Shown here one piece after another: positions 1,831 to 61,035 of a DNA stretch of 64,000 nt. How positions within the stretch are numbered: the first letter of the stretch is position 1; every line of letters begins with the position of its first letter. The notes under the pieces were generated by a model, which saw only the letters and a program-made list of their open reading frames with translations, had not been told where the DNA came from and made no database searches. Location: assembly GCA_002269645.1 (NCBI GenBank), contig NIVC01000591.1, positions 310,001-374,000 on the forward strand, given 5' to 3'. Position numbers and translations under genes: made by a program. The stretch is from Macrostomum lignano (lineage: Eukaryota).

Positions 1831-22512
<20,682 letters not shown>

Positions 22513-23389: not shown

Positions 23390-23680
23390 GAACTTGAAGC
23401 GACATTGTCACTTAACCGGTGAGAGGCATTACTGCCCATTTCCGCCGACTCCCCTGAGCAGGCGCACACTCACACAGGAGTGTACAGCGGCCCTAACTTT
23501 ATTTCTCGTAACACATACATGTACACCTAAAGGTACGTACACTTTACTATGCCGTCACTTCGTTGCCCTCAAGCTGGGCGTTAAATGCCCGAGCACACCC
23601 AAGGCCGAGACTCCAACTTAGTCCCAAATTAATGTGCGACTGTACTTGAGGTCGAGAATGGGTTGCTGGCAAACAAGGGA
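23390..23680 (-). mobile_element. Dispersed short interspersed repeat (unclassified), copy 2
   Basis: Reverse-complement homologue of 3840-4090. Confidence 0.7.
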
Positions 23681-23840
23681 AGACCGTCGCGTTAAACCAC
23701 TAGACTACGACACCCCTTTTAACAAGACACTACTTTACAATGACAAAATTATTGTTCTGGAATAAAACTGTAGACAGCAGAACAGAAAGTAGGTTAGAGC
23801 AGTTTATTAGTATTCCTACAGAGTTCGCGACAGTCGTTTG

Positions 23841-26800
23841 TTACTTCCCAGAAGCCGTCATGGCCCGCTTGTCGCCCGTTCTGTTCGGAAAATCCGCCGG
23901 ATTCTTGGGAACGCAGCCGCGCTGCTCAAGATCGAAAATGAGATGAGACCAGTTCGGATCGCGTCTCAATAGACTCTTGTTTCCTGAAGTGAGACATTTT
24001 TCAAGTTCAAAAATCCAGTTACACAATGGCTAAGCAATTAGTCATTAGCGGACAATGCACTAGTCTACCTGCGTGCGAACATTATTCCGCAGTTGAATAT
24101 GCTCATAAAGATCCTAAATGCTACCACGTGTTCAATTTTTCACAACCTTCTTCAAAAGAGTCAAAAGACGCACCTACAATGACGAGGCCTCGCTGAGCTC
24201 TCGTCAGCGCTACGTTGGTCTGGTTCTCGTCAGTGATGAAGCCCAGGAACTTCTTCTCCCAGCCGGGCAGCGGGTTCGCCTCGATGTCATAGTCCGGCAT
24301 AGAGCGGACCAGACTCAGCAGCACGTACGCGAACTCGCTGCCCTGACAGGCGATCACCGTGTTCACCGTTGGCATCGCCAGGTTCTCCTCCTTCAAGCGC
24401 CGCGTGATCTCGGACACCTGGTACTTGTACTGGGACATCACCGCGATGCACCTGCGAGGATCCTTCTTGTCGTCTCCGCTGAGCCGATTGTGAATCTCCT
24501 TGTAGACTCGAACCTGAACACCGAACACAGAACTTGTACGGATCAGTCTAAATACTAAAAGAGCTATTGATGTAACCACGCTCTGGTCGTGGGATATAGC
24601 AAGGGAAATTTTTCAAAAGTACCTCCGATCTCCGTGAACCCCCTGAGCAGAGCCGTCGAGACTGGGCCAGCTCTTTGACCAGGCCTGCTGACTCCCGCTC
24701 TGCTGCGCCCCCTGCTGCCTCGCTCCGTCTCCCACCCCACCACACGAGCCTTTCCGGAGCCCCTATCTCTTTCTGCACCTCCCCCGCTACTCTATTTCCC
24801 ATGCGCTCTACCCTATCTATTATGTATTTTTTCCCACTTTCCCTCTTTTTTTTCTTTTTGGACTGTTTTACCTGCGCTTTCCCCTCTCTTCCCGTGCCTA
24901 CTCACAGTACTTTGTGCGCTCAGCGTCGCCCCACCCCTTAGTAAACTCCCAAACGGTGAAGCAAGCCTTGTGACCCCTCTTTCCCCTCGATGACTCATCG
25001 ATGACTCACCACCCCCTCTTGCACTACCTTTTCTCATGCTATTGTTCTCCTTCCCAAATTTCTCATGCGACACCCACCCCACCTCTGCTTCTATTGTTCT
25101 CGTTTTTTATTCTTTCGTTCTTTTCACACCCGATTTTCACATTTTCCCGGATTTTATATTTCTTTTGTTCTCGTTTTCGCACCTAATTAGCACCTTTTCT
25201 CCAATGTTTACTTTTCTATTGTTCTCGATTCTCCCCAATTATCTCCGATTTCCATTTCCTTTTTTCTCGACCCCAGCCCCATTGTTCTCAATGTTTGCTT
25301 GCACAACACTTTCTCGACCTCCCGCTGCGCCAATTAGCCCCCACCCCACCTCTGGATTGCGCCATTCTCATGTTGCTATGCCGTTCTCATGATTCTCATC
25401 ATGACTCATTCTGACGTCATTTCGCCGGCAGCCAATCAGAGAGAGGGAGTCATGGAAACGACCTTGGAGCGGCGGCTGGGAAGGCTATTTAAGGAAGCGG
25501 TTTTCGGCGTGAGAACCTTAACTTCGGCTCTCCTCTTGTCCTTCTTTGGACTTGCTATCAGACGTTGATCTGACCCATTCGTCTATAGGACAAATCTCTG
25601 CCGGTCCGTGGTCTGTTACCGAGAAGTTACCTCAGCTCCCCAAGTGAGCTCACCTGCCGGCCCGCGGTCTGTTACCGCCCAGCATCTTCAGCATCGCCTG
25701 AACTACATCAGCGCCTCGTCGCTTCGGCGTATTACCGCTTCACAGTCTGCCTGTCTGCAGCCAGCAGCCGCCCTCGGTCACTCCATCGCTCTCTCTCTCT
25801 CTGTGCAGCTGCCGGTAAGTTCCTGTTACTAATTTGTGCTCTAATTGCCTTTGCTTATCCGGGGTTTGCTTATTTCCCATTGCTTGATTAGAGAGCTGAG
25901 CCAATTGTGATACCGTATCTTTTGCTGTATTTTATTCAATAGTGAAGCCGCCTAATTGTCTGATTATTTTGCCTAAGGGCGTAATTATTAACTATTAACT
26001 AACTCCATCATTATTCACACTTTCACCATCATTTAATTCATGGCTTCCTAAGACTTTCTCTCTGGGTAGCAAAGCATAAGGAAGTTTGGGTAAGCTAATG
26101 CTCTCCCCGTGCAAAGCCCGCCTGTGAGTGCGTGCTGTGGGTCCGTGTGCGGGCAGTAGAGGGAATTAGTGAGTCTTGGCACAGAATGGCAGTAGGAAGG
26201 TTGCAACTGCAACCTTCGCCCTGAGCGAAGCTGATGCGTCTTTTCGCCCTGAGCAATCTAAACTATAGCTAGTACATGTTCATCTCACACTACTCTTAGT
26301 AATTGAAATCGCAAGTCCGCCTCGCTCACAGCCACAAAGGATCCCCTGCTGAGAAATCCTCTAGATTGAGCCCAGAGTTCCCGATCATGCCCCAAGCAGA
26401 GTCCCTTTACTCGGCTGCATGTGTCTCCCCTGTTAGCCTAAATCCCCTGGTAACCAATCCAGGCGGGGCTCTAGCCTCGAGAGGTTTGGTAGTAAGATCC
26501 ACGTGCGCCAGGTCACATAGAGTGGCGGCAGCCACTCGGTCATGCTATGGCCGAGTGACCAACTATTGCACCTTGGCTACAGGTTGGGTCCATGTGGGTC
26601 CTTGGCCCTCTGGTCACGAAAGCGCTACCAAAGCTATTAATCATGTGGGCGGGACAGTCTGGTGCTGGAGATCCGTCAGGTCATTGCCCGGTCATAGTCA
26701 TTGCCCCTATGGTCATGCGTTCGCTTCTCAACGAAGCGGACGGGCGACAAGGGTGGTTACATCACTATCTAGAGTTCTTCACCATCGCATCAACGAAACT

Positions 26801-29800
26801 CACCACAGTCTTGATCTCCAGCTCGTTCTTGTATGAATCTTCGCGACCGTCCTCGGTGGCCACGAGTGTTCTCTCCTCCTGACCCTGGATATGCAGGAAG
26901 ACGATTCTCTCCTCCTCTCCCATGGGGTGAAAATCCTTAGCTGGAACATCAGGCAATGTGTCAAAAGGCTGATTGCGTCTTACACCAGGCCAACATCCGT
27001 GAAGGACGTTCGCGTTGCGCTGAGTCAAGAGACCGTGCCTTCTGACTCCGTTGGCACCGCGACTGTCGAACAAGTCATGCTTAGCCAGTCGATGCCAGTT
27101 CAGCCCAGTCCAACTAGCGTTGCCTTGAGTTCGGGTCTCGGCATCCAAGACACCCGTCCAGGACTTGGACGGCTGGGTGCGCAGACCTCCGGAGTCTTTC
27201 ACTGTGTAGAAACGCTTCGACGGAAAGTCCGCTAAGCTCGGATGCTAAAAATACATGCATTGGACATGAAGGCAATAAAGGTATTAACTACACTACTTCA
27301 CGCAGAGTTTATGTAATGTGACTGCTTTTTACATGCGACTCACCATTCTGTACTGCTGATTGAGCATGACCGAGTCGAGGCAGTGCATCTCAAGAAACGT
27401 CCTGCTCAGACCCAACTCTGCCGCCGTCTTGTTCTGAATGATTGGAGCGAGCTGCTTGTGGTCGCCGATCAGCACGACTCTCTCCGCATACTGGGATGCG
27501 GGTGTTCCTATGAGATTTGCTTTTTGTACTCCCAGACAGGAAGGCACTTCTTTTTCGACGTTTAGTCGACCAACTATCGGAACGAGCAGCTCAGGCTGAG
27601 TGCACATTCCAGCTTCGTCGATGATGATCTGAACGAATCGACAAGCGCGCTGCAGCACAGAACTGCAGCTGACGGAAGTCGTGCAAAGTACGACGTCGAA
27701 GTTTTGCAGCACCCGCTCTTTCGATTTTTGCACTTTGTCTTTGTAAAGCTTCACGCATCCCTGGACGAGTGCGTCTTCTCCCACCTCCTCCTCGGCGAGC
27801 TCCAACGCGCCTCGACGTCTCGATCGCAGTCGATTGTTTCGAATGAACCTATCGAACCGAGGGTTTCTTCCGGCTGCGGTTTTGATTGCTGCTTCCATGG
27901 TAACCGGAGCCTCAGTCTTGCTTCCAATAAACAGTTTGAACGCGTCATCAAACCCGCCAATGATGTAGGCGTCGTCGCTGTTCTCTCTGCGAATGAGCTC
28001 GTGCAGTGCGAAGCGCCTCATTGCAGGCGACACTTCATCGGCCGTCGAAATCTCTCCGGGCACGGGGTAGTGCATTCGCTCTACCTGCTCGCTGTAAACT
28101 CGAACCATTGAAGGACACTTGTCAGCCAGCAAGTCCCGTGACGCCTCGATGATGACGTCGACCGAGCGATTCGACGGTCCGCAGCACAGCATCTGGCGTC
28201 GACTCTGACGCTTTCGATTCTCGGGTCTCTTGCCTATGTACCTGTCAGAAGATGAAGTTCTGACTGGCATTCGACCGGGAATTTTATGTCCTCTACGATG
28301 TGAGTATTGAACCACCTGAAAGCCGTCGTCCTGACTTTCCTTAGAAGTCTCAGCAGAGTTATCTTCGGTTTCGCTTTCGTTGTCGTCCTCATCCTCGTCT
28401 TCACTGCTGTCCTCGAGATTCATGAAGCCATCGCTTCTGTGATGGTTGATGAATACGAACCAGTAGATCAGCATTACTCCTGTTGTTGTCTTGCCTGTTC
28501 CTGTGTCAGCGTTTTAGATTTTTTGATAAATTGACAAATGATAAATTGAGGAGCTGTAAGAACTTTTTAGGCATTTAGTGTGTTTTCTAACCTGGTGGTC
28601 CCCAGATGAGGGAGACCTGTCTTTGCACTGCTGCATTTAGAGCTTCTGCTTGTTGCTTGTTGCAGGGAACGAGTCTGTCCGAAACTCTAATTTGGAATGG
28701 CTGCGTTTTGCTTTTAGCTAGAGCATTGCGGTACAACATTTCGTCAACTGAAATATAGTTATGATTTTTATGCAAATTTTAAAAATGATGAAAACGTAAT
28801 TTAATTAGCAAGTAGCAAAGTAATTTGTCTTACCACCCCTGATATTCTCGTTCTGATCCCATCGTACAAGTCTTCCTGCGATTCGATGCTCGCTCTGGCC
28901 CCGCAACGTCTGCAACACTAATTCATGCCTTCTGATGGGCAGAAACTTCATTATCAACTCCACGGTAGCATGGCGGAGGGTCTCTTGGGAAGCACTGCCG
29001 ACGGGACTGACTTCGTTCAAATGGAAGACAACAAAGTTGCAAAAGTGCGCAGACTTGTCATTGCACCGGTCTGACCGACAATGGATGCCGTCAAACACGA
29101 GCAGGATGCCACCGTGGCCAACCCACGTGTACTCGTCTTGCACAGCACGAAGGCAAATGTATTCGGCATAGCGTTTAACGCTTTTCGCGGCCTTGAAAAC
29201 AGCATTGGTAACGTCCGGTACGCCTCTCTTTTTACCTTTCTTAGTCTCAGTGCTTTGGTTCAACTTTTTTTGCCAGGATTTATTACTCTCAATCAGTACA
29301 GAGTCTGTAAAGCAGATGTTTCTGCGCTGGCACAGAGACTCGGTTAGATTGAACATTCCCAACCAGCGGTTGTTTTCGTCGTCCCATTTCCACGTAAGCG
29401 GCACGTCACAGAGTACAAAAGTTTCATTATTGCTGATGGATACTGAAGCAGACTCCATCGCTACAATGCCCTGCCAAATGTCGGCATACTCAACCACGTC
29501 ATCGTATGAACGCTTGCTGCGGCGTTGAGCCACCTGCTCGAAATTGTCAGCTGGTCGGCGTCGATGCGCGAGGCAAACTGAAAATGTGTCGCAGATTTCC
29601 AACACCTGAACGGTGGGAATGAGCATTCCGTGATTCCTGACTGCTCCAATTTGCGCTCGCACTTCGTCGCCAAGCAAAAAGTCTCGATAAAAATTCACGA
29701 TGCTCCCGGCCGTGTCAGACAAAGCATAAATCTTAGCAACGCCGCGCCTTTCAGTCAAGTCTGCTTCGATCAAATCCAAACTCGAAACGCCGCACTGTTC

Positions 29801-32548
29801 AAAGTCTCCATTTTTGCTTAAAAGCTCTTTCTTCATAGACAGCAGCTCACGTGACCGGAAAAATGTGTTATTGCTGCTGTTCGCCACTTTGATGTCACTT
29901 CGGTGACTTTTTCGAGACTTTTCCGTATCACTGCTCGTAACGACTTCAGCGGCAGTGTGCCGAAGAATTCTGGCTGTCCAGTTGCAGCGAACTATTTTTT
30001 CCTCCTCAATCACGCTGGGCACTGCGCTGAGACTCAGCGACCGAAACTGGACAGTTCGAGCCACTTTTGGTGACTGATCGAGCATCTTATGCTGCACTGA
30101 AAGACCATCCTTATCAACTGAAGAAATCTGTACAACATCTCTAACGGGCTTTTTTGCTAAATCCTCACCAAAATCTGCACACTCACAGCTGGATTCAAAC
30201 CGCCTAGTCTTCTTCTGAACGGCAGACAAATGTTCACAGACTTTACTGATGTCAGATGTTGGCCCAAGATACTTTTCTCCTTGGTTAAGAACGAATCTTA
30301 CCGCTCTATGGACCATCAGGTCCGCATAGCGACGCATTGGACTCGTGAAGTGAACGTAGTCTTCCTTTTCCAAACTGAAATGAAGCCTGTTCTCTGAAGG
30401 GCTCTCACTGTACTGCGCCAGCTCACACAGTCCGTGCCAGTCCCGAATCGCCAGTTTCAAATGCGGAAACCGTCTCTCGTCGTACAAAAGCGACAATGCA
30501 CCTTTGTTATCGCCTCGTTGACAGAACGCTCTAAGATTTTTTGCGTCCTCGTTGTGCATCTGGAACGGAATGTTCGAGCTCAGGACCTCCTTACCGACGA
30601 GTTTCAATGCGCGACTCAGCTCAGCAGAATGTGTCGCCTTCGGTCCGTGACGCACAATCCAACGGGTCACGTCGATCTCTCGAGGTCGCTGTTGCACTCG
30701 AATTGGGTAAGCTAGAACCGAATCCCCATGCCTGTGCAGGAAGTCTCCGACCGCTGAGTTCGCAGCTAGCATCAGCTCCTCTACAAGTGCGCTCGTCTCG
30801 GGGTACGAATCGTTTTCATGACGAACAAATGCAGCCTGACCGAGTCTTGCCAGTCTCCAATCACGAGTGACCGGCCATAGCCGGAGCAGCATCTGCTCGA
30901 TTCGAGGCTCCAAGGCGCCTGTCTCGCTGTCAAGCACTCGCTGAACATCCTCTTTGTTTAGACGCTTGTCAGATCGGATCACAGTCAGACAGATTCGAGA
31001 ACTCTCTACAAGTCCATTGGCGTTCAAGTTAAACACGACTGACACGCATCGTCTGTCCTGTCCTTCGACAAGACTGATCAGAGACTCGGCAAGTTGTCGT
31101 GGCAGCATGTGGTTTGCAGTTGCTCCTTTTTGCTTGGCACCTTCGCTTGGATAATATGTTACGCCTCGACGTCTGGCCTCTCGATCGATTGGTGTGTCCT
31201 CACCCACAAACTCAGCCAAATCCGTGATGTGCACGCCTACAGTAAGCTTCCCATTTTTGTGCTTCTTAAGACTAATCGCATCATCCATGTCTTTCGTGTC
31301 CGGACCGTCAATAGTCACGGTAATGTGACTTCTGAAGTCATTTCTGCGTTCAGGGACGAAGTCGTTTCCGGCAACTTCGCGTATTCTTTCAACGTCTCGA
31401 AATTTATCATCTTCGCTGTATGGGAGTGGAATCCCATGAATTAGTTGCAGCAGTTCAACGTCTTGACTAAATGAATGTGCCTTGGAAATCACGCAAATCA
31501 CATTACCTTTCGGATAGTAATTCTGTACAGGCCACTCAGTGATGCAGACCACAAAGAGATGCTCACAGTCGTGTTTGATAACTTTGAAAACAGAATCTTC
31601 AACGAATATAAATCGATTTTCAGCCTCATCGAGCACAGGTCGGTAAATGGAGACTAAATTTTTGTTGGCATAATCGTAGGAAATTTCTTTTAATCGTTCT
31701 CTTTCAGTAATCAAACCGAATTTTTTGCGAAGCTGTCTCTGTTCATGCGGCTTTCTTCTCTGTCTCCTTTCGTGTTCTCTTCTAGCAAACGAGTTGTCGT
31801 ACGAGATCTTCGGCACGGTGCCGCACAGAGGTCGCATGCAGGTGCCGAGAGCGTCGAGCATTTCGCAAACCAATAGTTTGTAGCGCAGCTTAACGCGCTG
31901 CTTGTAGACCCCGACAACCCTACCGGATGGCTCCAAGCTGGTTTGACTGCTCTGACCGCCAGGACTATTGTTGGCCTGTAATTCCTCGGCATTCATCAAC
32001 TCAACGATTACCTGATCGTCTTCGCAGGCCCTGCCGCAGTTGCTGCGACCTTTGAGCTGGATCTTAGAAACTTGATCGTCTGGCGAGACCGGACAGGCCC
32101 AACCGAGCTGAGGACCGTCCAAGTGAAGATGGCAGATTTTATATTTGGCTGGCTGTTCAGCCATTCGCTCAAGCAGCTGCGCTCGTGTCTGCATTGCCTC
32201 GTATGGCGGCTTGTCCGTGAGCTTGCCGAAGAATCTCCCGACTGGGAAGGGTCCGCTACTGAAATCGATGACTTTCACAACAAACTGCGAGCCTTGGGTG
32301 AGCGAAATCTCCTCGTCAAGCTGGATTTTCTCTGGGAAAGCCCGATCCACTGGCACCGCGAAGCTACAGCGACTGGCATCACTGCCCAGGACGCAGCGGT
32401 AGAACACATCGGGCTGGTTCCTGAGCAGGTCCTCCAATTTATTTCTCGGTCTCAAAATGCTGGCTTCAAATTCGTCTTCTTGTTGACGGTCTTCAAATAG
32501 CCGGATTATAGAAAGCAATTCCTCTCGGTTGGCAACTCGTTGGGACAT
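23841..32548 (-). CDS. HELZ2-like RNB exoribonuclease-SF1B helicase, copy A (1983 aa). Exons (minus) 32548-28834, 28747-28592, 28500-27344, 27244-26804, 24513-24174, 23983-23841
   Basis: RNB motifs TIDGPDTKDMDD, VEELMLAAN and HFTSPMRRYAD. UPF1-like helicase motifs IWGPPGTGKTT, GPSNRSVD, IIDEAG, LIGDHKQL, QYRMHP, CQGSE and NVALTRAQ. GT-AG introns of phases 1,1,0,0,1. No in-frame stops in the spliced model. Confidence 0.9.
24568..26764 (+). mobile_element. Solo LTR (Gypsy-like, 2197 bp) in intron 4 of copy A
   Basis: TG...CA ends with a 12-bp terminal inverted repeat (TGATGTAACCAC / GTGGTTACATCA) and a 4-bp TSD CTAT (24564-24567, 26765-26768). Internal CCAAT (~25430) and TATTTAA (25486-25492) on the plus strand. 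The orthologous 92-bp intron of copy B shows the empty site. No coding capacity recognised. Confidence 0.85.
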
Positions 32549-33243
32549 TGCTGTTAAGGGGCCAAGAATTTTTTATTAAACACGTTTGCTACAATACCTG
32601 TAGTCTAGCAAACTGTTTCGAAAAAATTTAGATAAGCCTTGTAGTTATCGAAAAAGAAAATTTTTCTGCCTCTGCTCCCAATATTATAGCCGTCTTATGC
32701 TTGCAGTTTGCCTGAAATTTCCTGGAATTTCCACGGTCAGACTTCGGCTGTATACAAGGTATTATGGGTATAATATTTATTATTAGTGTACGCCTCAGAG
32801 CTTACAGACATGCAGACTGTACGCTTAAAATGCAAGTACGCTAGAAAACAAAATTACCCTCCCTTATAGCAGATGGCTTCGTTTTACTGGACAGCGCTGA
32901 AGAAGGAGTAGAGGGGGAGGTGAATTGCTCTTCTCTTCTCTCTCTAGCCCTTGTTACTCCCTGTCTGGCAACCAAACGTCAACCCTATATTTAGCTTCGT
33001 AGATTAACCGTACCATTGCACTTTCCACAACTGTGGTTCCATGAAAAATGCGAAACAAGCGACTGCAACCACGGTCCCGCTAAATCACAATACAAGCCTT
33101 TATCGAGATGGCTGGCATGGGCTGAGCAACTTATCGATGATACTGATAATAATAATATTAATATTATATTATTTGATTACACCTGCTCCAATCAAGGACA
33201 ACTAAAGCAACGTATATACAGGAGGCAACACTCACGCTTCATA

Positions 33244-33857
33244 GAAAAAGTTTTGAAGGCCACTTTTCGCCGAGAAATACACTACGGAGAGAGGAAGCTT
33301 ACAGTTTTTCAGAACAAAAAGTGTTATTGCTTTCGATAGGAGGCAGACCCAATGTTCATCTTTTGCTATGCTGTGCCTTTCTTACAGCTCTATTAATATT
33401 CATAAAGCTTTTCATTTAGAAAATTAGAATTCTATGGTAATTTTGATTCTACAAACGCTTGCATATGTCCTGTGTCTAAAAACCATTAAAATGGCACGGC
33501 TCGGCTCATTGATTTTATGAATCTATTTTGTCATTCTTAGCTGACTATGTAACAACATGTGTAGCAGAAATGATAAAACAGATTCCTAAAGCCAAAGATT
33601 CGAGCCGTGCCTTGCATTTTTATGATGTCTAGGTACAGGAAATGTACGTTGAATCAGAAATTAACGCAGAATCCTGATTTTCTGAACGAAAAGCTTTATG
33701 AATATTAATAGAGCCATAAGAAACGCACAACATATCAAAATATGAACATTGGGTCTGCCTCCTATCGAAAGCAACAACGATTTTTGTGCTGAAAAATGAA
33801 GACTTCCTATCTCCGTAGTGTATGCTTCGGCGAAAAGTAGCCTTCAAAACATTTTCC
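33244..33857. mobile_element. Foldback/MITE-like element with ~230-bp imperfect inverted arms (33244-33478 and 33629-33857)
   Basis: The arms are reverse complements (e.g. TTGCTTTCGATAGGAGGCAGACCCAATGTTCAT vs ATGAACATTGGGTCTGCCTCCTATCGAAAGCAA). A further partial copy lies at ~53035-53200. Confidence 0.75.
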
Positions 33858-33911
33858 AAAGATTTCAAGCGTTGCGTCCTTCTACTTTAGTAGTCCTTGG
33901 CCCCAATTGGG

Positions 33912-34157
33912 ACAGATGTGCAACTGACAGTTTGACCGCAGCTTTTTGCGCGGCACATCTGAAGGCTGCGTACGGCTGTTCACTCCAAGAACTGGAGGTT
34001 CGCCGCGCACACAATCAATTACCCCAGCTAATGCTGGCACCTATTTTACAGCTGGGTGAACTGAAGTAATACAGAGTTAAGTGCCTTGCTCAAAGGCACA
34101 AATTGTTCCAGTGGTGAGTCGTTAGTCCGACGCTCTGACCACTAGGCTACAACCCGA
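33912..34157 (-). mobile_element. Same SINE family, copy 3 (B-box region deleted)
   Basis: Homologous to 14681-14950 with an internal deletion. Confidence 0.75.
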
Positions 34158-34162
34158 TATAT

Positions 34163-34664
<502 letters not shown>

Positions 34665-35606
34665 ATAAAGAGTAAACAGAATAGAAAGCAACCCAGTTGC
34701 TTTTAAGTCTCACACCGCGATGTAATTCGGAAACAAAAAACTGCATTGTCGTTTACTGTGTTGCCGACCTTTTTTGCGCTTATCTTAAAAAAATAGCAGT
34801 ACCATTGCACTGCAAAAAGTCTGGAAAGTGGCAACTTAGCCTGCCAGTTTATACTATCTAATCCTTTTCTCTTTTCGCAAGCGCCCAAATGTAAGGTTGC
34901 GTACATTGTTGCGTACATTGTTGCGTACATTGGCCTGCTTTCTGCATAGCTATCATTGCGGACGGAAATTCCAGGAGAATTAAAACAGTAAGAGCTACGT
35001 GAGCTAGAAGTGTACTGAGGCTGAGGAGAGAAAGTATAAATTTTCAATAATGTACTTCGGAGTGTACTGTGAGCCTTTGTTTCTAGCTGATTCAAGAAAT
35101 TTACTGGAAAAACCGTGAGCTGTTTGGACGTAGCGCTTTATAATTTGCTAGTAGGCAAGGGCCTAGGCAAGCCGTTAATTTGGCAGTGTTGTGAAAACGT
35201 TGACATCTCTGATTTGGCTGCTTTTAAATCACCAAATTTTTAACTCCACTGCATGATCCGATAAGTCAGAGGCATCAGGGTAAGTAATATATATACATAT
35301 ATATATAAATGCATGTAACTCGTAACAAGGCCACAATGTCCTTCTCCAATAACCGATTTTATCTGTGGGTTTTAGTCTGTTTGATTCGTTTCACTGAATT
35401 TAGTGCCAATGCCATCCGTTTGCAGACGTTGTTTCAGCAAAATGCAACCTTAGCAGCTTTTAATTTAATCAGAGATTGAAAACAATCTTGAAAACCATTA
35501 AAAATTTTAGTCTATGGTGAAAACCCGTGCCAATCAAGCCGGCCTGCTTTGTCCTGTAGAACATAATGCTCAAAAATCACTTTTACTTTGTCCATCCGTC
35601 AGAGCC

Positions 35607-38600
35607 ATGGCGGAACCACCTGACCCAGATAGATTCAAAGACCAAAGGATGCTCGAGCTGGTTCGTTTCTTCCAAGACCGTCAACAGTTGGACGACTTCG
35701 AGAGCGGAATTTTGAATCCAGTCAACCGCCTAAAAGACTTAGCAAAGGAAAAGCCACAAATTTTCAAAATCTGCACACTTGGAGTAGATTCCAACTTTGC
35801 TCAAGTTGCAGTGCCAAACGACAGTTCTGACAATGACGCCAGTCCAAAGCACATTTACATGAACAAGAAGATCACGATGGCGTATGGTACTCGCTTTGTG
35901 GTAGAAATCATTGAGTCAAGCAAATTAAGCATCACTAGAGGCATTTTCAGGGGCAGATTGATGGACAAGCCAGCTTATAACATGAAAACTAAAGCGCAAC
36001 TTATGCAGCGACTGCAGAATAAGCCTGACAAGTACAAGGTCTGCCGACTGCACCTGGACGGACCGCAACTCGCCTGGGCCTATCCGCTGTCAGCCGAGGA
36101 TCCGATACAGAAGATTCAGCTGAAAGGGCGCAGCAACAGTGGTAGAGCTTGCGAAGACGACGAGGTAATTGTCAAAGTGCTGGAGGTCGATGAGAACGGA
36201 GTGGAAGCTCATGGCACCGTTGTCGGCATGTGGCGTCAGAATGAGAAGCTAAAGTACAAGCTGTTCGTGTGCGAAGTCATTGAAGACTACGGAACTCTCA
36301 TGAGGCCGCTGTGTGCGAGCGTGCCGAAAATTGGATACGATAACCGATTTGCTATTTGGGAGCATCAGAGAAGAATTCACAAATTCATGACACCCGCCAT
36401 GCTTGAAAGACAGGCTAAAGGAATGCTTTCCTCTTCTCAGATCCTTAGTATGAATCCTCATGAGTTCGCTAATAAAAATTTTGTGTCTGTGTACAGTCCA
36501 GTCGAGGATGACAGCAGCGAGGAAATTGAGTTTGTTGAGGAAAGGTGCGAAAGAATTCTAAAGCATGATTGCGATAAACTGTTCATTGTTTGCTTTGAAG
36601 ATTGGCCAGTCGACCGATGGTACCCGAGAGGCAAAGTCGTGCATGTCGTTTTAAAGGAGCCGTCCTTTTTAAAGACCCTTGATCTGATTCAGGTCAGCCT
36701 CTCGGTGCCACCGCACATCAAACTGACATGCAGTCTGATGACCCGACAGGTAATGGCTATCGAAAGAAGAGTACAGCAAAAGGTGGACCTAAAGTCGGAA
36801 AAAAGAGAAGACTTCAGAAATAATTTGACTGTGACTATTGACGGCCCGGACACGAAGGACATGGATGATGCAATTAGTCTGGCTGTGGCAAAGAACGGCA
36901 AGCTTATTGTCGGTGTACACATTACCGATTTGACCGAGTTTGTAGGTGAGAACACACCAATCGATCGAGAGGCTAGACGTCGAGGCACGACATACTATCC
37001 CAATAAAGGAGCCCAACAAATGGGCGCCCTCACTAATCACATGCTGCCGCGACAGCTCGCTGAAAAATCGATCAGTCTGGTCGAAGGACAGGACAGACGA
37101 TGCATGTCAGTCGTGATTAGCTTGAACGCCAATGGACTTGTAGAGAGTTCCCGAATCTGTCTGACTGTGATCCGATCTGACAAGCGTCTAAACAAAGAGG
37201 ACGTTCAGCGAGTCCTTGACGGCGAGACAGGCGCCTTGGAGCCTCGAATCGAGCAGATGCTGCTCCGGCTATGGTCGGTGACTCGAGATTGGAGACTGGC
37301 AAGACTCGGTCAGGCTGCATTTGTTCGGCAGGAGAACGAGTCGTACCCCGAGACGAGCGCACTTGTAGAGGAGCTGATGCTAGCTGCGAACTCGGCAGTC
37401 GGAGACTTCCTACACAAGCAACGGGATTCTGTTCCAGCTTACCCGATTCGAGTGCAACAGCGACCTCGAGAGATCGACGTGACCCGTTGGATTATGCGGC
37501 ACGGACCGAAGACGACACATTCTGCTGAGCTGAGTCGCGCATTGAAACTCGTCGGTAAGGAGGTCCCGGGCTCGAACATTCCGTTCCAGATGCACAACGA
37601 GGACGCAAAAAATCTTAGGGCGCTCTGTCAACGAGGCGACAACAAAGGTGCATTGTCGCTTTTGTACGACGAGAGACGGTTTCCGCATTTGAAACTGGCG
37701 ATTCGGGACTGGCACGGACTGTGTGAGCTGGCGCAGTACAGTGAGAGCACTTCAGAGAACAGGCTTCATTTCAGTTTGGAAAAGGAAGACTACGTTCACT
37801 TCACAAGTCCGATGCGTCGCTATGCAGATATCATGGTCCACCGAGCACTGCGAGTTTGTCTAAAATCCATTCAATCAGTCGAATGCTCTTATGGATCTGA
37901 TGAAATCTGCAGATTTTTAACTGCCGCTACTATTCGAAATAAACGCTTTAGTCGTCGTAGTAAAGGTTCCGAAACGGCACTTCAGCTTAAAGAGGTGCCG
38001 CAAAGGGTTGTCATCCAAGTGTCGCAACTTGATGAAGACGGGATTGTGTTCAGACACGAGTACCTGGACAGTGAACCAAGACTTGCCAAACTTGTACAGT
38101 ATCGATTCTTAAACCTTTGCGAAAAACCCGAAGAGAAGGAACCAACCATGGCTGTATGCTGCAAATGGAAAGCTCGAATCCTGCTACATACTACTGTAGC
38201 GGCTGAACGGTCTCCGAACGACAGAGTAGGACGCACTGGGGCGCAGACGTGGTGTGATCCAATAAAGGTTGCAAGTTTTTCGTCCGTTACAAGTTTTAGA
38301 CCCACGGAGCTGCTGCGGGCCAAGAATGAGCTTCAGCGTCACAAGTGGGATTATTCAAAGTGCGAATTGTCGAGTAGCAGTCTTCTAGAAGCTGATTTAG
38401 GCGACAGAAGAGGTGTATCGAATGTTTATTCTACACCGGATGGACACGGAAGCGTCGTGAGGTTTTACCGAGACATCCATCTTGGCGACGAAGTAAATGG
38501 TCAGATTGGCGCCATGAGCAATCACGGAATGCTGGTACCGACGCTGAAGCTTATCGAAATTTGCGATACCTTTGCTATCTGCCTTGCGCATCGGCGCCGT

Positions 38601-41600
38601 CCTGTGGACAGTTTTGAGCACGCGTTGCGTCACTACATTAAAGTAGTTTACCAGGATATTGACGAGTACGTTAAAATCTGGCAAAACTTTGTTGCCATGG
38701 AAGCAGCTACAGTGTCAGTCAGCAACAACGAAGCGTTTGTTCTTTGCGAAGTGCCAATTGTGTGGAGACAGGACAAACGGAATAACAGATGGCTGGGAAT
38801 GTTCAACTTGACTTCCAACTTTTGCAGCGCGAACAACTTGAGCTTCACCGACTCGGTTGTTACTGAGGAACTGAAATCATGGAGAAAGAAGCTCGAAAAG
38901 ACAAGGAAAAATTCTGAAAAGCGCGTGAAGGATGTTACAGACGCTGTTTTTACTGCCGCACAACGCATTACTCGATACTCCGAGTACATCTGTCTCCGAG
39001 CCAATATCCGCAACGAGTACACTTGGATTGGCCATGGTGGAGTCCTACTCGTATTTGATGGCCTCCACTGCCGATCTAACCGGTGCAACGACAAGTCCGT
39101 GCACTTCTGCAACTTCGTAGTGTTCCACCTCAACGAGGTCAGCCCAGGTGACAGCGCTCCACAGGAGACTCTGACCAACGCTACCATTGAAATCGTGATG
39201 AAGTTCTTACCAATAAGGCGACACGAGTTGGTGCTGCAGGCGATGCGGCATCAGCGCGGAATCAACGCTGCAGACGCCCTGGTCCGTTGGGACGAGCAGA
39301 AAAATGCCGAAGGAGGTAAGGAAATGAAATGAGATTCGCAGGTTACTTAAGGAATTATTCAAACAACAAATACCAATTGATCTGTGTCCCCTTTCTTCTA
39401 TACATCGGTTCAATTGTTTTACATTTTGATCCCGTATTAATATTTTTTGACAGTTTAAGAAAGGGTCTTCTGAGTGTAATCTATAGAATCACGTTTATAG
39501 TCAGTCATTTTTGCCTTTCAGTCGACTTCTTGATCTACAAAAATACTTTAGTGGAAAACAGCATCAGGTCCTATGATATTCGCGTCGGGAATGAGAACGC
39601 AGGGCAGAATCTTCGATTGGTTCCCTGCAATGATTGCCAAAGACAAGCTCTGGAAACCGCAATCAAAAAGCGTATTTCTCTTATCTGGGGACCTCCTGGT
39701 GAGCATAGAAACAATTCTGAAAATTATTTTGTGAGGTGCGTTTGCTATTATACTCAAGATTCTCGCTGGTTGCACAAATTAAAAAGTACTCAGTAGATGT
39801 ATCACTTTTGTAAATTTTTAAGTGCAACTAAATTTCATATCCAGCTAGCGTGAAATTGCATCGCATACTTGCAGTTGCAGTACGCATTTCAAACGTTCAT
39901 CAAGTAAAAGCCACTTGTAAATAAAACAATTAAATGCCTAGCTAATCACAACAAGCTAATGTACATCAAGGGTAGACACTTTGAGAGACAGATTTTCCGG
40001 CAAACATTTGTTTGTGTACGGAAAACAGAAGCTGTTCTCTCACTGATGGTATACCTTTAAACACTTTTAGGCACTGGGAAAACAACAACAGGTGTAATGC
40101 TCATCTTCTGGTTCGTTTTCATCAATCGTAACCGGAAGGATGCTATGCCTGCCCCAGATATTATTCTCCCGAACGATGACGACGAAGAATATAACGAATT
40201 CGAAGACACACAGTACAGCGATGATGAGGAAGATGAGGAACAAGATGTTCAGGACGTATTTGAAGAAACGGAAGGTCTTCTACCTGAGTTTGAAGATAGG
40301 AAAGATGCCGTTGATGCTGAATTAACCAGAGCTAACAGAGATGGCTTCGAAGAAGTAGTTTATCGCCGGAAAAGTAGGCGTCGATTGTCATGCTCGACTT
40401 CAGCTAAGACTTTATCGGATAGCCGCAGATGGAATCCGCAACCGATCCGCAAATGTCAAAGTCGACGCCAGATCCTGTGCTGCGGACCGTCGAATCGATC
40501 GGTCGACGTCATCATCGAGGCGTCTCGGGACTTGCTGGCCGACAAGTGTCCCTCAATGGTTCGAGTTTACAGCGAGCAGGTAGAGCGAATGCACTACCCC
40601 GTGCCCGGAGAGATTTCGACGGCCGATGAAGTGTCGCCTGCAATGAGGCGCTTCGCACTGCACGAGCTCATTCGCAGCGAGAACAGCGACGACGCCTACA
40701 TCATTGGCGGGTTCGATGACGCGTTCAAACTGTTTATTGGAAGCAAGACTGAGGCTCCGGTTACCATGGAAGCAGCAATCAAAACCGCAGCCGGAAGAAA
40801 CCCTCGGTTCGATAGGTTCATTCGAAACAATCGACTGCGATCGAGACGTCGAGGCGCGTTGGAGCTCGCCGAGGAGGAGGCGGGAGAAGACGCACTCGTC
40901 CAGGGATGCGTGAAGCTTTACAAAGACAAAGTGCAAAAATCGAAAGAGCGGGTGCTGCAAAACTTCGACGTCGTACTTTGCACGACTTCCGTCAGCTGCA
41001 GTTCTGTGCTGCAGCGCGCTTGTCGATTCGTTCAGATCATCATCGACGAAGCTGGAATGTGCACTCAGCCTGAGCTTCTTGTTCCTATTGTTGGTAGATT
41101 ATCTACTGAAATATCCGTTCCATCTAGCTTGGGAGCCAGCAATCAAGCTTTCAGTAGAAAGCCAGCATCCCAGTATGCGGAGAGAGTCGTGCTGATCGGC
41201 GACCACAAGCAGCTCGCTCCAATCATTCAGAACAAGACGGCGGCAGAGTTGGGTCTGAGCAGGACGTTTCTCGAGATGCACTGCCTCGACTCGGTCATGC
41301 TCAATCAGCAGTACAGAATGGTGAGTCGCATGTAAAAAGCAGTCACATTACATAAACTCTGCGTGAAGTAGTGTAGTTAATACCTTTATTGCCTTCATGT
41401 CCAATGCATGTATTTTCAGCATCCGAGCTTAGCGGACTTTCCGTCGAAGCGTTTCTACACAGTGAAAGACTCCGGAGGTCTGCGCACCCAGCCGTCCAAG
41501 TCCTGGACGGGTGTCTTGGATGCCGAGACCCGAACTCAAGGCAACGCTAGTTGGACTGGGCTGAACTGGCATCGACTGGCTAAGCATGACTTGTTCGACA

Positions 41601-42545
41601 GTCGCGGTGCCAACGGAGTCAGAAGGCACGGTCTCTTGACTCAGCGCAACGCGAACGTCCTTCACGGATGTTGGCCTGGTGTAAGACGCAATAAGCCTTT
41701 TGACACATTGCCCGATGTTCCAGCTAAGGATTTTCACCCCATGGGAGAGGAGGAGAGAATCGTCTTCCTGCACATCCAGGGCCACGAGGAGAGAACACTC
41801 GTGGCCACCGAGGACGGTCGCGAAGACTCATACAAGAACGAGCTGGAGATCGACACTGTGGTGAGTTTCGTTGATGACAGACCGAAGAACTCTAGTGATC
41901 GAACTCTTGAATATTTATACTTACCAGTAGAATTTCTGTGTTTGGTGTGTAGGTTCGAGTCTACAAGGAGATTCACAATCGGCTCAGTGGAGACGACAAG
42001 AAGGATCCTCGCAGGTGCATCGCGGTGATGTCCCAGTACAAGTACCAGGTGTCCGAGATCACGCGGCGCTTGAAGGAGGAAAACCTGGCGATGCCAACGG
42101 TGAACACGGTGATCGCCTGTCAGGGCAGCGAGTTCGCGTACGTGCTGCTGAGTCTGGTCCGCTCTATGCCGGACTATGACATCGAGGCGAACCCGCTGCC
42201 CGGCTGGGAGAGGAAGTTCCTGGGCTTCATCACTGACGAGAACCAGACCAACGTAGCGCTGACGAGAGCTCAGCGAGGCCTCGTCATTGTTGGTGAGGAT
42301 CTTAGCCAATGTTTATACATGACACGTGACCGTTCGTGTGTGCATCATAATCTTTCAATATTTTCATGCCCTGAGCAAACCTTTGACGCCGCTGCTCAGG
42401 TAACCGCAAGCTGTTGCGTCGCGATCCAAATTGGTCTTACCTGTTGCACGATCTCAAGGAGCGAGGCTGCATTCCGAAATCTGCCGCTGACTTCCCAAAT
42501 AAGACGGGGGACAAGAGATTCTTGACAAGAACTGGGAAGTGGTGA
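35607..42545 (+). CDS. HELZ2-like RNB exoribonuclease-SF1B helicase, copy B (2020 aa). Exons 35607-39315, 39522-39698, 40071-41320, 41420-41860, 41953-42292, 42400-42545
   Basis: Same RNB and helicase motifs and identical intron phases as copy A. ATG 35607 aligns with the copy A start. An in-frame upstream ATG at 35514 is an alternative. Confidence 0.9.
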
Positions 42546-53034: not shown

Positions 53035-53200
53035 TTTCTTGGAAAAGTTTTAGCAGGCAGGTTTTTTCATTTTTTCAGCACAAAAATTGTTATTGCTTTC
53101 CATAGGACGCAGACCTAATGTTCATATTTTGATATTCATAAAGGTTTAGGAAATTGGGATTCACATTTCCTGTACCTGAAAATCATGAAAATGCAATTTA
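53035..53200 (+). mobile_element. Partial copy of the foldback arm seen at 33244-33857
   Basis: Shared TTTTTCAG.ACAAAAA.TGTTATTGCTTTC.ATAGGA.GCAGACC.AATGTTCAT. Confidence 0.6.

Positions 53201-59371: not shown

Positions 59372-61035
<1,664 letters not shown>

What the first reader, a model, noticed from the sequence alone, without database searches (positions are those of the whole stretch)
23841..42545. Head-to-head pair of intact RNase II/R-SF1B helicase fusion genes: a candidate RNA-defence/decay module
Seen: two divergently oriented paralogues, start codons ~3 kb apart, with the same intron phases. Both keep the RNB metal-binding motif D-x5-D-x-DD (DGPDTKDMDD; A ~31280-31320, B ~36835-36870), HFTSPMRRY, and all UPF1-like motifs (GPPGTGKT, DEAG, GDHKQL, QYRMHP, QGSE, NVALTRA). 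Established: RNB plus SF1B helicase in one chain is the HELZ2 hallmark; mammalian HELZ2 is interferon-induced; RNB enzymes degrade 3'->5' while UPF1-like helicases move 5'->3'. Inference: a lineage-specific, co-regulated pair of single-chain degradosomes, possibly antiviral or anti-transposon, arranged like paired immune receptors on a shared bidirectional promoter.
Basis: partly seen in the sequence, partly recalled or inferred. Interest (0 to 1): 0.85.

Follow-up and report, generated by a model that had tools for sequence, protein, structure and literature searches.

The report
Inverted pair of flatworm HELZ2-like genes
Two intact, back-to-back genes in the flatworm Macrostomum lignano each encode an RNA-degrading enzyme fused to an RNA-unwinding motor, relatives of the vertebrate antiviral protein HELZ2; they are real and tidy but belong to a known protein family, and nothing here shows that they work as a coupled defence module.

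Summary
The window is Macrostomum lignano contig NIVC01000591.1. Two divergent six-exon genes are intact: A on the minus strand (23841-32548, 1983 aa) and B on the plus strand (35514/35607-42545, 2051/2020 aa). Introns sit at the same positions and phases. Both carry OB_HELZ2, CSD2, RNB and one UPF1-like helicase, with every catalytic motif present. Both are already in GenBank as transcript-based "hypothetical proteins" (PAA80283.1, PAA80284.1).

They are not one-to-one HELZ2 orthologues. They lack helicase 1 and the zinc fingers. They sit in a Macrostomum-only clade of at least five paralogues, sister to mollusc "HELZ2-like" proteins, many of which have the same short architecture.

A and B are old duplicates: synonymous divergence is saturated over about 60% of the gene. 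The RNB core and most of the helicase, including intron 3 and the edges of intron 4, are 90-97% identical, which indicates recent gene conversion.

A second copy of the locus keeps the head-to-head pair. Another paralogue pair is tail-to-tail and a third paralogue is single. The 3-kb spacer holds repeat insertions private to this copy.

So "lineage-specific intact pair" is supported. [quoted passage not shown] remains untested and is weakened. Verdict: a new member of a known kind, of modest interest.

The parts
23841..32548 (-). Gene A (GenBank PAA80283.1, BOX15_Mlig018244g2), 1983 aa. Exons 32548-28834, 28747-28592, 28500-27344, 27244-26804, 24513-24174, 23983-23841 (stop TAA at 23843-23841).
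   Evidence: Splice junctions read from the sequence. The translation is 100% identical over 100% of its length to P0001. Pfam domains.
35514..42545 (+). Gene B (GenBank PAA80284.1, BOX15_Mlig031546g2). Exons 35514(or Met at 35607)-39315, 39522-39698, 40071-41320, 41420-41860, 41953-42292, 42400-42545. 2051 aa from 35514, 2020 aa from 35607.
   Evidence: Identical to the UniProt and NCBI products except for the start codon and a 23-aa skip.
30284..31345 (-). RNB catalytic domain of A (aa 402-755), with DGPDTKDMDD at 31309-31280 and HFTSPMRRY at 30352-30326. OB_HELZ2 (aa 121-218) and CSD2 (aa 321-365) lie upstream in the same exon.
   Evidence: Pfam, motif mapping, PDB sequence hits to RNase R, DIS3 and DIS3L2.
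36804..37862 (+). RNB catalytic domain of B (aa 431-783), with DGPDTKDMDD at 36840-36869 and HFTSPMRRY at 37797-37823.
24174..28747 (-). Single UPF1-like SF1B helicase of A (exons 2-5; the 1B barrel starts in exon 1). Motifs: I GPPGTGKT 28601-28487, II DEAG 27619-27608, III GDHKQL 27466-27449, IV QYRMHP 27355-27239, V QGSE 24345-24334, VI NVALTRA 24216-24196.
   Evidence: Pfam AAA_11 and AAA_12, motif map, PDB hits to UPF1/Nam7 and Sen1.
39522..42292 (+). Single UPF1-like SF1B helicase of B (exons 2-5). Motifs: I 39689-40084, II 41045-41056, III 41198-41215, IV 41309-41425, V 42121-42132, VI 42250-42270.
30303..31345 (.). Gene-conversion tract 1, A arm. It pairs with B 36804-37846 over 1044 bp at 90% identity and covers the RNB core.
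   Evidence: Inverted repeat, blastn. Synonymous divergence is 0.05-0.23 here against >1.2 in the flanks.
26769..28209 (.). Gene-conversion tract 2, A arm. It pairs with B 40455-41895 over 1442 bp at 95.8% identity. It covers most of exon 3, all of intron 3, exon 4 and the first 35 nt of intron 4.
   Evidence: synonymous divergence 0.0-0.1. The non-coding intron sequence is equally conserved.
24171..24554 (.). Gene-conversion tract 3, A arm. It pairs with B 41912-42295 over 384 bp at 96.6% identity. It covers the last 41 nt of intron 4 plus exon 5.
32549..35513 (.). Head-to-head spacer of 2965 bp. It contains a 613-bp palindromic MITE-like element (33244-33856), a SINE-like repeat (33913-34114) and (GATA)128 (34156-34667). 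AG acceptor-like sites lie 2-3 nt upstream of each ATG.
   Evidence: The block at roughly 33167-34155 is absent from the sister locus L005.
24555..26768 (-). A 2.2-kb insertion in intron 4 of A. B's intron 4 is only 92 nt. The insertion is also present in the sister copy A' (intron 2306 nt).
   Evidence: No repeat of it elsewhere in the window.
41096..41164 (+). A 69-nt in-frame segment of B exon 3 (RLSTEISVPSSLGASNQAFSRKP) that the GenBank CDS skips. It has no GT-AG boundaries. It includes the 21-nt break (B 41136-41156) between the two inverted-repeat arms that make up the helicase conversion tract, where A and B differ most.
   Evidence: inverted-repeat arms I2 and I3.

Best explanation
The locus holds two old, inverted (head-to-head) paralogues of a flatworm-specific branch of the HELZ2-like family.

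**Architecture.** Each gene encodes one chain built as OB_HELZ2/CSD1, CSD2, RNB 3'-5' exoribonuclease, S1-like linker, 1B barrel, then a single UPF1-like SF1B helicase. This equals the C-terminal two thirds of vertebrate HELZ2, without helicase 1 and without zinc fingers.

**Likely mechanism (inferred from human HELZ2 biochemistry).** The helicase loads on a 5' single-stranded overhang of the strand that base-pairs with the substrate and translocates 5'->3'. This peels the duplex while the RNB domain threads and degrades the freed substrate strand 3'->5'. On an antiparallel duplex both activities move in the same physical direction, so structured or double-stranded RNA is degraded in an ATP-dependent way.

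**Evolution (shown).**
- The A/B duplication is ancient. Synonymous sites are saturated over the N-terminal OB region, the S1/linker/1B region, the start of RecA1 and the C-terminal tail.
- It predates the recent genome duplication of M. lignano, because a second copy of the locus has the same pair.
- Non-allelic gene conversion between the inverted arms has recently and repeatedly overwritten the RNB core and most of the helicase, introns included.
- Both genes are transcribed, intact and under purifying selection.

**Arrangement (inferred).** The head-to-head layout is most simply a by-product of inverted segmental duplication, not evidence of functional coupling. The biological role, whether defence against RNA viruses or retroelements or bulk decay of structured RNA, is not established.
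For: **Gene structure, integrity and motifs:**

**Identity with transcript-based GenBank models:**. The annotation method is described in PMC5730564.

**Architecture and absence of helicase 1**
- Pfam finds only one helicase and no zinc fingers.
- Local domain HMMs give OB-RNB-linker-1B-hel for all Macrostomum proteins and many mollusc proteins. Fish, starfish and acorn-worm proteins also have an N-terminal helicase.
- tblastn with the helicase-1 regions of fish and starfish HELZ2 hits only the known helicase exons in the whole 64-kb window.

**Phylogeny:** NJ tree on 814 non-converted columns. The Macrostomum clade has 100% bootstrap, A+B 100%, and sister position to molluscs 77%.

**Gene conversion**
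- Sliding Nei-Gojobori synonymous divergence is >1.2 or saturated outside the tracts and 0.0-0.23 inside them, apart from one divergent patch (0.57) within the helicase tract.
- DNA identity of 90-97% extends through intron 3 and the intron 4 edges.
- A and A' differ mostly inside the tracts (23 of 34 amino-acid differences). In the RNB tract, 6 of 10 differences are B-like states in A'.

**Second copy of the pair:** head-to-head on NIVC01001754.1.

**Purifying selection since that duplication:** dN/dS is 0.20 for A/A' and 0.38 for B/B'.

**Other paralogues are arranged differently:**

**Mechanism:** the helicases and RNB of human HELZ2 cooperate on duplex RNA that carries a 5' overhang on the complementary strand, and helicase 2 is the more active ATPase (PMC10516660).
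Against: - No enzymology, expression profile or phenotype exists for these genes. I found no mention of Mlig018244, Mlig017669, Mlig003274 or HELZ2 in the supplements held for three Macrostomum papers.
- The mechanism is transferred from a two-helicase human enzyme at only about 23% identity.
- Lineage-specific helicase insertions could change the behaviour. These are an acidic 80-130 aa stretch after Walker A and a conserved 75-90 aa stretch between motifs IV and V.
- A head-to-head layout retained in both copies of the locus is also what shared regulation would predict.
- The trees are NJ only, on a small taxon sample.
Confidence: 0.8

Rival explanations
1. A and B form a functionally coupled, co-regulated antiviral or anti-transposon module driven from one bidirectional promoter, analogous to head-to-head paired immune receptors.
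For: - The head-to-head orientation is retained in both copies of the locus.
- Both genes are intact and under purifying selection.
- The peripheral RNA-binding modules diverge while the catalytic cores are kept alike.
- Human HELZ2 is interferon-induced and restricts LINE-1 (PMC10516660; bioRxiv 10.1101/2022.03.26.485892, listed).
- The family is expanded in the lineage, as is common for defence genes.
Against: - No expression, induction or interaction data were found.
- The spacer is 2.1-3.1 kb rather than <1 kb. It tolerates a block of about 1 kb of MITE and SINE sequence plus a 0.5-kb microsatellite.
- The sister pair P0005/P0006 is tail-to-tail and P0004 is single, so head-to-head is not a family rule.
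- No partner is catalytically degenerate or carries an integrated extra domain.
- 38.8% of M. lignano genes are spliced-leader trans-spliced, so transcription start sites cannot be inferred from ATG positions.
Confidence: 0.15
2. The inverted pair, or its mosaic identity, is an assembly or polishing artefact. Examples would be a palindromic PacBio chimera or paralogue collapse.
For: Mlig_3_7 is a redundant long-read assembly of a neopolyploid genome with 180 Mb of duplicated blocks.
Against: - The arms are not a palindrome. Synonymous sites are saturated over about 60% of the gene, intron 4 is 2290 nt in A and 92 nt in B, and the 3' exons are not alignable at DNA level.
- An independent contig carries the same pair, with 1-3% divergence and its own private differences.
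- Separate UniProt models from another annotation match both genes.
Confidence: 0.02
3. The mosaic similarity reflects strong purifying selection on the catalytic cores rather than gene conversion.
For: The high-identity tracts coincide with the RNB core and the helicase core.
Against: - Synonymous divergence drops from saturation to 0.0-0.1 inside the tracts.
- Intron 3 and both edges of intron 4 are 96-97% identical.
- Tract states differ between A and A', with B-like residues in A'.
- In the P0005/P0006 pair the high-identity blocks fall elsewhere: RNB, linker and 1B are about 90% identical while the helicase is 64-70%.
Confidence: 0.03
4. One member is a decaying or non-functional duplicate.
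For: The GenBank CDS of B skips 69 nt without canonical splice sites. A has a weak GTTAGA donor at intron 2.
Against: - All four genes (A, B, A', B') have uninterrupted reading frames of about 6 kb and complete motifs.
- dN/dS is 0.2-0.4.
- The gene models are derived from transcripts.
Confidence: 0.05

Closest known systems
Vertebrate HELZ2 (human HELZ2; Huntzinger et al. 2023, PMC10516660)
   Same: - The block OB_HELZ2/CSD, CSD2, RNB, S1-like linker, 1B, UPF1-like helicase 2 aligns end to end with fish HELZ2.
- RNB motifs I and IV and helicase motifs I-VI are present.
- The expected activity is ATP-dependent 3'-5' degradation of structured RNA.
   Different: - No N-terminal zinc fingers and no helicase 1.
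- Only 22-23% identity.
- All four RNB motif-I aspartates are kept, whereas human HELZ2 has a substitution of a key catalytic-centre residue.
- Two lineage-specific helicase insertions.
- Multi-copy and lineage-specific rather than a single orthologue.
- I know of no interferon system in flatworms (background knowledge, not tested here).
Mollusc 'HELZ2-like' proteins, for example Mizuhopecten XP_021359819.1, Saccostrea XP_062574957.1, Haliotis XP_067677769.1 and Pinctada KAK3089644.1
   Same: - They are the nearest relatives outside Macrostomum, at 28-35% identity over CSD2-RNB.
- Many have the same short architecture with one helicase and no helicase 1.
- They are multi-copy in bivalve genomes.
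   Different: - They lack the Macrostomum helicase insertions.
- No inverted-pair arrangement was seen at the one mollusc locus examined.
- They are uncharacterised experimentally.
RNase R, DIS3 and DIS3L2 (RNB exoribonucleases)
   Same: CSD-RNB core. These are the best solved-structure matches for aa 317-777.
   Different: They have no fused SF1B helicase and no OB_HELZ2 domain. DIS3 has PIN and CR3 domains and works within the exosome.
UPF1-like SF1B helicases (UPF1/Nam7, Sen1, MOV10, HELZ, ZNFX1)
   Same: 1B barrel plus RecA1 and RecA2 with motifs I-VI. PDB sequence hits to UPF1/Nam7 at E=1e-27 to 1e-29.
   Different: These helicases recruit nucleases in trans. Here the nuclease is in the same chain.
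Head-to-head paired plant NLR immune receptors (for example RGA4/RGA5 and RRS1/RPS4; from background knowledge)
   Same: Divergent orientation of two related genes across a short spacer.
   Different: Those pairs are functionally asymmetric, with a sensor carrying an integrated decoy and a helper. Here both partners have the same complete catalytic set, their cores are homogenised by conversion, and no interaction or co-regulation is known.

Membership tests
HELZ2 (vertebrate-type) | RNB domain with the motif-I aspartates and motif IV | tested here: met
   Pfam RNB at E=2e-61 and 3e-62. DGPDTKDMDD and HFTSPMRRY are present in both.
HELZ2 (vertebrate-type) | HELZ2-specific OB fold (PF25049) and CSD2 upstream of the RNB domain | tested here: met
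   OB_HELZ2 at 92.5 and 90.1 bits against a cut-off of 29.3. OB_Dis3 is at the cut-off in A and below it in B.
HELZ2 (vertebrate-type) | C-terminal UPF1-like helicase (helicase 2) with motifs I-VI | tested here: met
   AAA_11 and AAA_12, motifs, end-to-end alignment with fish helicase 2.
HELZ2 (vertebrate-type) | N-terminal UPF1-like helicase 1 | tested here: not met
   No helicase HMM hit N-terminal to the RNB domain in any Macrostomum paralogue, while fish and starfish proteins have one. tblastn with helicase-1 queries finds nothing else in the window.
HELZ2 (vertebrate-type) | N-terminal zinc fingers | tested here: not met
   No zinc-finger family at E<=0.01 in A, B, P0004 or P0005. Only about 115 aa precede the OB domain in A. 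Pfam sensitivity is the limit of this test.
HELZ2 (vertebrate-type) | One-to-one orthology with vertebrate HELZ2 | tested here: not met
   Five Macrostomum paralogues form their own clade (100% bootstrap), sister to mollusc proteins.
HELZ2 (vertebrate-type) | Induction by interferon or infection | not testable with these tools
   No expression data found.
Short, single-helicase HELZ2-like proteins of Lophotrochozoa | Architecture OB_HELZ2-CSD2-RNB-linker-1B-helicase without helicase 1 | tested here: met
   The domain-HMM map is the same as in Mizuhopecten, Pinctada, Saccostrea, Haliotis and Patella proteins.
Short, single-helicase HELZ2-like proteins of Lophotrochozoa | Phylogenetic grouping with mollusc members | tested here: met
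   In the NJ tree on non-converted columns, Macrostomum plus molluscs has 77% bootstrap with starfish and fish outside. The converted-column tree does not recover this grouping; there the Macrostomum clade pairs with the starfish protein at 61%. Support is moderate and comes from NJ only.
Bidirectional-promoter gene pair | Divergent transcription start sites less than about 1 kb apart, with correlated expression | tested here: inconclusive
   ATG-to-ATG distance is 2965-3058 bp here and 2077 bp in the sister locus, with repeat insertions in the spacer. Transcription start sites and expression cannot be determined with these tools.
Paired (sensor/helper) immune receptors | Functional asymmetry between partners, such as an integrated decoy or a degenerate motif in one of them | tested here: not met
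   Both partners keep the same domains and all catalytic motifs. Their cores are 96% identical.

The most novel reading that the evidence does not exclude
Macrostomum has evolved its own small arsenal of single-helicase HELZ2-like "one-chain degradosomes", arranged as inverted gene pairs. Ongoing gene conversion keeps the nuclease and motor cores interchangeable, while the RNA-recognition periphery (N-terminal OB region, S1/linker/1B, C-terminal tail) diversifies between partners. On this reading the family would be a modular, target-diversifying innate defence against RNA viruses or the abundant LTR retroelements of this genome, working without interferon. The head-to-head A/B pair would be co-induced from its shared spacer.
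Probability: 0.15. Interest if true: 0.6.

Novelty: new member of a known kind. Interest (0 to 1): 0.3.

Why it matters
If the biochemical inference holds, these genes show that the minimal working unit of HELZ2 is the RNB domain plus helicase 2. That unit is widespread in lophotrochozoans, and a genetically tractable flatworm (RNAi by soaking, transgenesis) carries at least five such genes. This would give a convenient system for asking what HELZ2-type enzymes do outside the interferon context, for example against the LTR retrotransposons that make up 21% of this genome.

The locus is also a clean textbook example of mosaic concerted evolution between inverted paralogues: saturated and near-identical segments lie side by side, with introns included in the identical segments. 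It matters for annotation too. Read mapping and expression estimates for A and B will be confounded across the converted tracts and by the second copy of the locus.

Beyond that the finding is ordinary. The family, the fold and the genes themselves are already in public databases.

Tried and rejected
1. **Expression and literature.** A full-text search for Mlig018244 returned 0 papers. "Macrostomum" plus "HELZ2" returned one irrelevant earthworm paper. Supplement searches of PMC5730564, PMC5946080 and PMC12896417 for the gene ids and HELZ2 returned nothing, and PMC12801592 has no supplements held.
2. **Structure.** AlphaFold2 on the helicase region of A with an 11-sequence alignment gave mean pLDDT 51.5 and pTM 0.49. 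The lineage-specific insertions were below 50. This is too poor to interpret, so no fold search was run.
3. **Solved structures.** No HELZ2 structure exists in the PDB copy. Only RNase R, DIS3, DIS3L2 and UPF1 matched, by sequence.
4. **Whole-window repeat scan**. The output was swamped by microsatellites. Targeted blastn replaced it.
5. **Earlier idea, rejected.** I first took P0005 and P0006 for genome-duplication homeologues. They are in fact adjacent tail-to-tail paralogues.
6. **The 69-nt skip in B.** I looked for a cryptic canonical intron to explain it. No GT-AG combination of the right length exists, so it stays unexplained.
7. **The insertion in A's intron 4.** No match elsewhere in the window. 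It was not classified.
8. **Promoter and terminator scanner.** Not used, because it models bacterial sigma-70 signals.


Full report
**1. What is there**

The window is Macrostomum lignano (free-living flatworm), assembly GCA_002269645.1, contig NIVC01000591.1, at about positions 310001-374000.

Two very long ORFs face away from each other: 1247 aa on the minus strand ending at 32548, and 1272 aa on the plus strand starting at 35514. Reading the junctions gave two six-exon genes with GT-AG introns at homologous positions and identical phases 1,1,0,0,1.
- Gene A: 32548-28834, 28747-28592, 28500-27344, 27244-26804, 24513-24174, 23983-23841, giving 1983 aa.
- Gene B: 35514-39315, 39522-39698, 40071-41320, 41420-41860, 41953-42292, 42400-42545, giving 2051 aa, or 2020 aa from the annotated Met at 35607.

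My model of A is 100% identical over its whole length to GenBank PAA80283.1 (BOX15_Mlig018244g2). B corresponds to PAA80284.1 (BOX15_Mlig031546g2). That annotation was built from RNA-seq and de novo transcripts (PMC5730564), so both genes are transcribed and spliced essentially as modelled.

**2. What the proteins are**

Pfam finds OB_HELZ2 (PF25049), the DIS3-type CSD2, RNB, AAA_11 and AAA_12 in each protein. It finds nothing else: no zinc finger and no second helicase. The RNB motif-I aspartates (DGPDTKDMDD), motif IV (HFTSPMRRY) and helicase motifs I, Ia, II, III, IV, V and VI are intact in both. By sequence, solved-structure relatives are RNase R, DIS3 and DIS3L2 for aa 317-777 and UPF1/Nam7 and Sen1 for the helicase. 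No HELZ2 structure exists.

A word-indexed search found only M. lignano paralogues and fish HELZ2 at 22-23% identity. An exhaustive HMMER search with aa 1-816 of A found 244 relatives at E<=1e-30. I built local HMMs for five segments (OB, RNB, S1-like linker, 1B barrel, helicase) and mapped them on all retrieved proteins.
- Every Macrostomum protein and many of the closest hits read OB-RNB-linker-1B-helicase, with nothing helicase-like upstream.
- Fish, starfish and acorn-worm proteins have an extra N-terminal helicase.
- The named closest hits are mollusc proteins that NCBI already calls "HELZ2-like": Pinctada, Mizuhopecten, Argopecten, Saccostrea, Haliotis, Patella, Tegillarca and Nucella.
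- The many hits of about 1200-1400 aa are unnamed ORF calls on ENA and Logan contigs that stop inside the 1B barrel, so they are most likely truncated gene predictions.
- tblastn with the helicase-1 parts of fish and starfish HELZ2 finds only the known helicase exons in the 64-kb window.

These are therefore short, single-helicase HELZ2-like proteins. They equal the C-terminal two thirds of vertebrate HELZ2 as described by Huntzinger et al. 2023 (zinc fingers, helicase 1, CSDs, RNB, helicase 2).

**3. Lineage-specific family**

M. lignano has at least five distinct paralogues: A, B, P0004 (Mlig017669), P0005 (Mlig003274) and P0006 (Mlig019024). In an NJ tree on 814 columns outside the conversion tracts, the five form a clade (100% bootstrap) and A and B are sisters (100%, 56% identity). 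That clade is sister to the mollusc proteins (77%), with starfish and fish outside. The tree built on the converted columns does not recover the mollusc grouping; there the Macrostomum clade pairs with the starfish protein at 61%. They are not one-to-one HELZ2 orthologues.

All five share two insertions in the helicase that no mollusc, starfish or fish protein has.
- An acidic, probably disordered stretch of 80-130 aa between motifs I and Ia.
- A stretch of 75-90 aa between motifs IV and V with the conserved pattern SWTG..W.G.N.H.LA..N.NVL.GCWPGVRR.

**4. Mosaic identity means gene conversion**

A and B are 69% identical overall, but very unevenly. The table gives sliding-window Nei-Gojobori synonymous divergence.

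| Region of A (aa) | Synonymous divergence |
|---|---|
| 1-496 | saturated or >1.2 |
| 497-736 (RNB core) | 0.05-0.23 |
| 737-1401 | saturated or >1.2 |
| 1402-1983 (helicase core) | 0.0-0.1, apart from one patch at 0.57 |

At DNA level there are three tracts.
- A 31345-30303 with B 36804-37846, 90% identity.
- A 28209-26769 with B 40455-41895, 95.8% identity. This spans all of intron 3 and 35 nt of intron 4.
- A 24554-24171 with B 41912-42295, 96.6% identity. This includes the last 41 nt of intron 4.

Near-identity at synonymous sites and in introns excludes purifying selection as the cause. The duplication is old, and conversion between the inverted arms is recent.

**5. A second copy of the locus, and how recent the conversion is**

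GenBank holds a second pair, PAA64396.1 (A') and PAA64395.1 (B'), on contig NIVC01001754.1. It is also head-to-head, with 2077 bp between the ATGs. This fits the known recent genome duplication and assembly redundancy of the species (PMC10733133, listed).
- The B side is 98.8% identical between the two loci and the A side 96.6%.
- All four genes have complete reading frames. dN/dS is 0.20 for A/A' and 0.38 for B/B', based on few substitutions.
- A and A' differ at 34 residues, 23 of them inside the conversion tracts. In the RNB tract, 6 of 10 differences are B-like states in A'.
- Synonymous divergence between A and A' is 0.06-0.07 in the tracts against 0.016-0.03 outside them.

Conversion has therefore continued since the genome duplication.

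**6. Is the head-to-head layout meaningful?**

The spacer (32549-35513) contains a 613-bp palindromic MITE-like element (33244-33856, with related fragments near 53065-53261). It also holds a SINE-like repeat (33913-34114, with copies at 14681-14884 and 19193-19300) and (GATA)128 (34156-34667). The block of about 990 bp carrying the MITE and SINE is missing from the sister locus. The spacer is therefore 2-3 kb and tolerant of insertions, unlike compact bidirectional promoters.

AG acceptor-like sites sit 2-3 nt upstream of both ATGs. Because 38.8% of M. lignano genes are spliced-leader trans-spliced, transcription start sites cannot be inferred.

The other paralogues are arranged differently.
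- P0004 is solitary, flanked by RING, Tctex and RRM genes.
- P0005 and P0006 are adjacent but tail-to-tail.
- P0005 and P0006 are also mosaic, but with a different pattern: RNB, linker and 1B are about 90-94% identical and the helicase 64-70%.

So inverted duplication followed by patchy conversion is the recurring theme, not head-to-head pairing, and conversion does not specifically target catalytic cores. Neither partner is degenerate or carries an extra domain, so the analogy with sensor/helper immune-receptor pairs has no support. I found no expression or functional data for these genes.

**7. How it most likely works**

Shown: domain order, intact catalytic residues, transcription and purifying selection.

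Inferred from human HELZ2 biochemistry: the RNB domain degrades single-stranded RNA 3'->5'. The SF1B helicase loads on a 5' overhang of the complementary strand and moves 5'->3'. On an antiparallel duplex that is the same physical direction, so the two activities cooperate to degrade structured or double-stranded RNA in an ATP-dependent way. In the human enzyme helicase 2, the one retained here, is the more active ATPase.

Unknown: the substrates and the biological role. Defence against RNA viruses or retroelements is plausible by analogy and from the family expansion, but it is untested.

**8. Verdict**

The genes are already in public databases as hypothetical proteins, and the short architecture is common in molluscs under the name "HELZ2-like". 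I file this as a new member of a known kind. The short form is a variant relative to the only characterised HELZ2, and the locus adds a neat case of ongoing gene conversion between inverted paralogues. Interest is modest.

Noticed in passing
window 41096-41164 (B exon 3); homologous patch in A at 27568-27500: The GenBank CDS of B (and of B') omits exactly 69 nt (23 aa, RLSTEISVPSSLGASNQAFSRKP) between helicase motifs II and III. No GT-AG intron of that length exists there. A UniProt model (A0A1I8HZ95) keeps the segment. It includes the 21-nt break between the two inverted-repeat arms of the helicase conversion tract, where A and B differ most, and it lies where mollusc and fish proteins have no sequence at all. 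It could be an exitron-like event, non-canonical splicing or a mapping artefact.
   Followed up: partly
L003 (NIVC01001881.1) 10001-24863 (+) and about 29981-34863 (-): A second inverted pair in the same family. P0005 (Mlig003274) and a gene 97-100% identical to the C-terminal half of P0006 (Mlig019024) lie tail-to-tail about 5 kb apart. Their identity is also mosaic (49-100% by segment), but in a different pattern from A/B.
   Followed up: partly
L005 (NIVC01001754.1) 988-18723: The whole A/B pair exists a second time in the assembly, most likely as the recent genome-duplication copy. All reading frames are intact, the spacer is shorter (2077 bp), and the tract states differ, with A' carrying B-like residues in the RNB tract.
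   Followed up: yes
window: A aa 1308-1395 (exon 3) and aa 1690-1780 (exon 4, 27244-26804); the same in B: All five Macrostomum paralogues share two helicase insertions absent from mollusc, starfish and fish HELZ2-likes. One is an acidic low-complexity stretch after Walker A. The other is a conserved 75-90 aa segment between motifs IV and V (SWTG..W.G.N.H.LA..NVL.GCWPGVRR). AlphaFold gave no confident fold for either (pLDDT <50).
   Followed up: partly
window 24555-26768: Intron 4 of gene A carries a 2.2-kb insertion relative to B's 92-nt intron. It is pyrimidine-rich on the plus strand of the window at its 24.6-25.4 kb end. It is also present in A', so it predates the genome duplication. It was not matched to any other part of the window and was not classified.
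   Followed up: partly
window 33244-33856, 33913-34114, 34156-34667: The spacer holds a 613-bp palindromic MITE-like element (fragments also at 53065-53261). It also holds a SINE-like repeat (copies at 14681-14884 and 19193-19300) followed by (GATA)128. The MITE and SINE block is absent from the sister locus.
   Followed up: partly
window 32550-32552 and 35508-35513: AG acceptor-like sites (ttaacAG, attttAG) lie 2-3 nt upstream of the first ATG of A and of the upstream ATG of B. They are possible spliced-leader trans-splice or 5'-UTR intron acceptors. A GTAAGT...TTGCAG candidate 5'-UTR intron lies at about 35280-35426.
   Followed up: no
window about 13841-22512 (+): The neighbouring gene is convergent with A. 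Its annotated product is 2208 aa with no precomputed Pfam hit, but one exon (20778-21485) matches the flagellar-associated PapD-like domain (E=4e-10). A perfect 15-nt tandem array (21480-22259) lies within the annotated gene span near its 3' end. The same gene flanks A' in the sister locus.
   Followed up: partly
window 44329-44862 (-) and 45560-46240 (-): A reverse-transcriptase fragment (RVT_1, E=4e-12) and an adjacent unannotated ORF lie 2-4 kb downstream of B. This is probably a degraded retroelement.
   Followed up: partly
window 4500-7500, 9600-10500, 12600-12800, 49100-49800, 56600-58800, 59300-60900: Numerous long tandem and microsatellite arrays give spurious ORFs in several reading frames, and often on both strands. 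They include the (CAGA/GTCT)n-type arrays at 12.6 kb and 59-61 kb that pair as inverted repeats. A WD40-repeat exon lies at 49821-50318.
   Followed up: no
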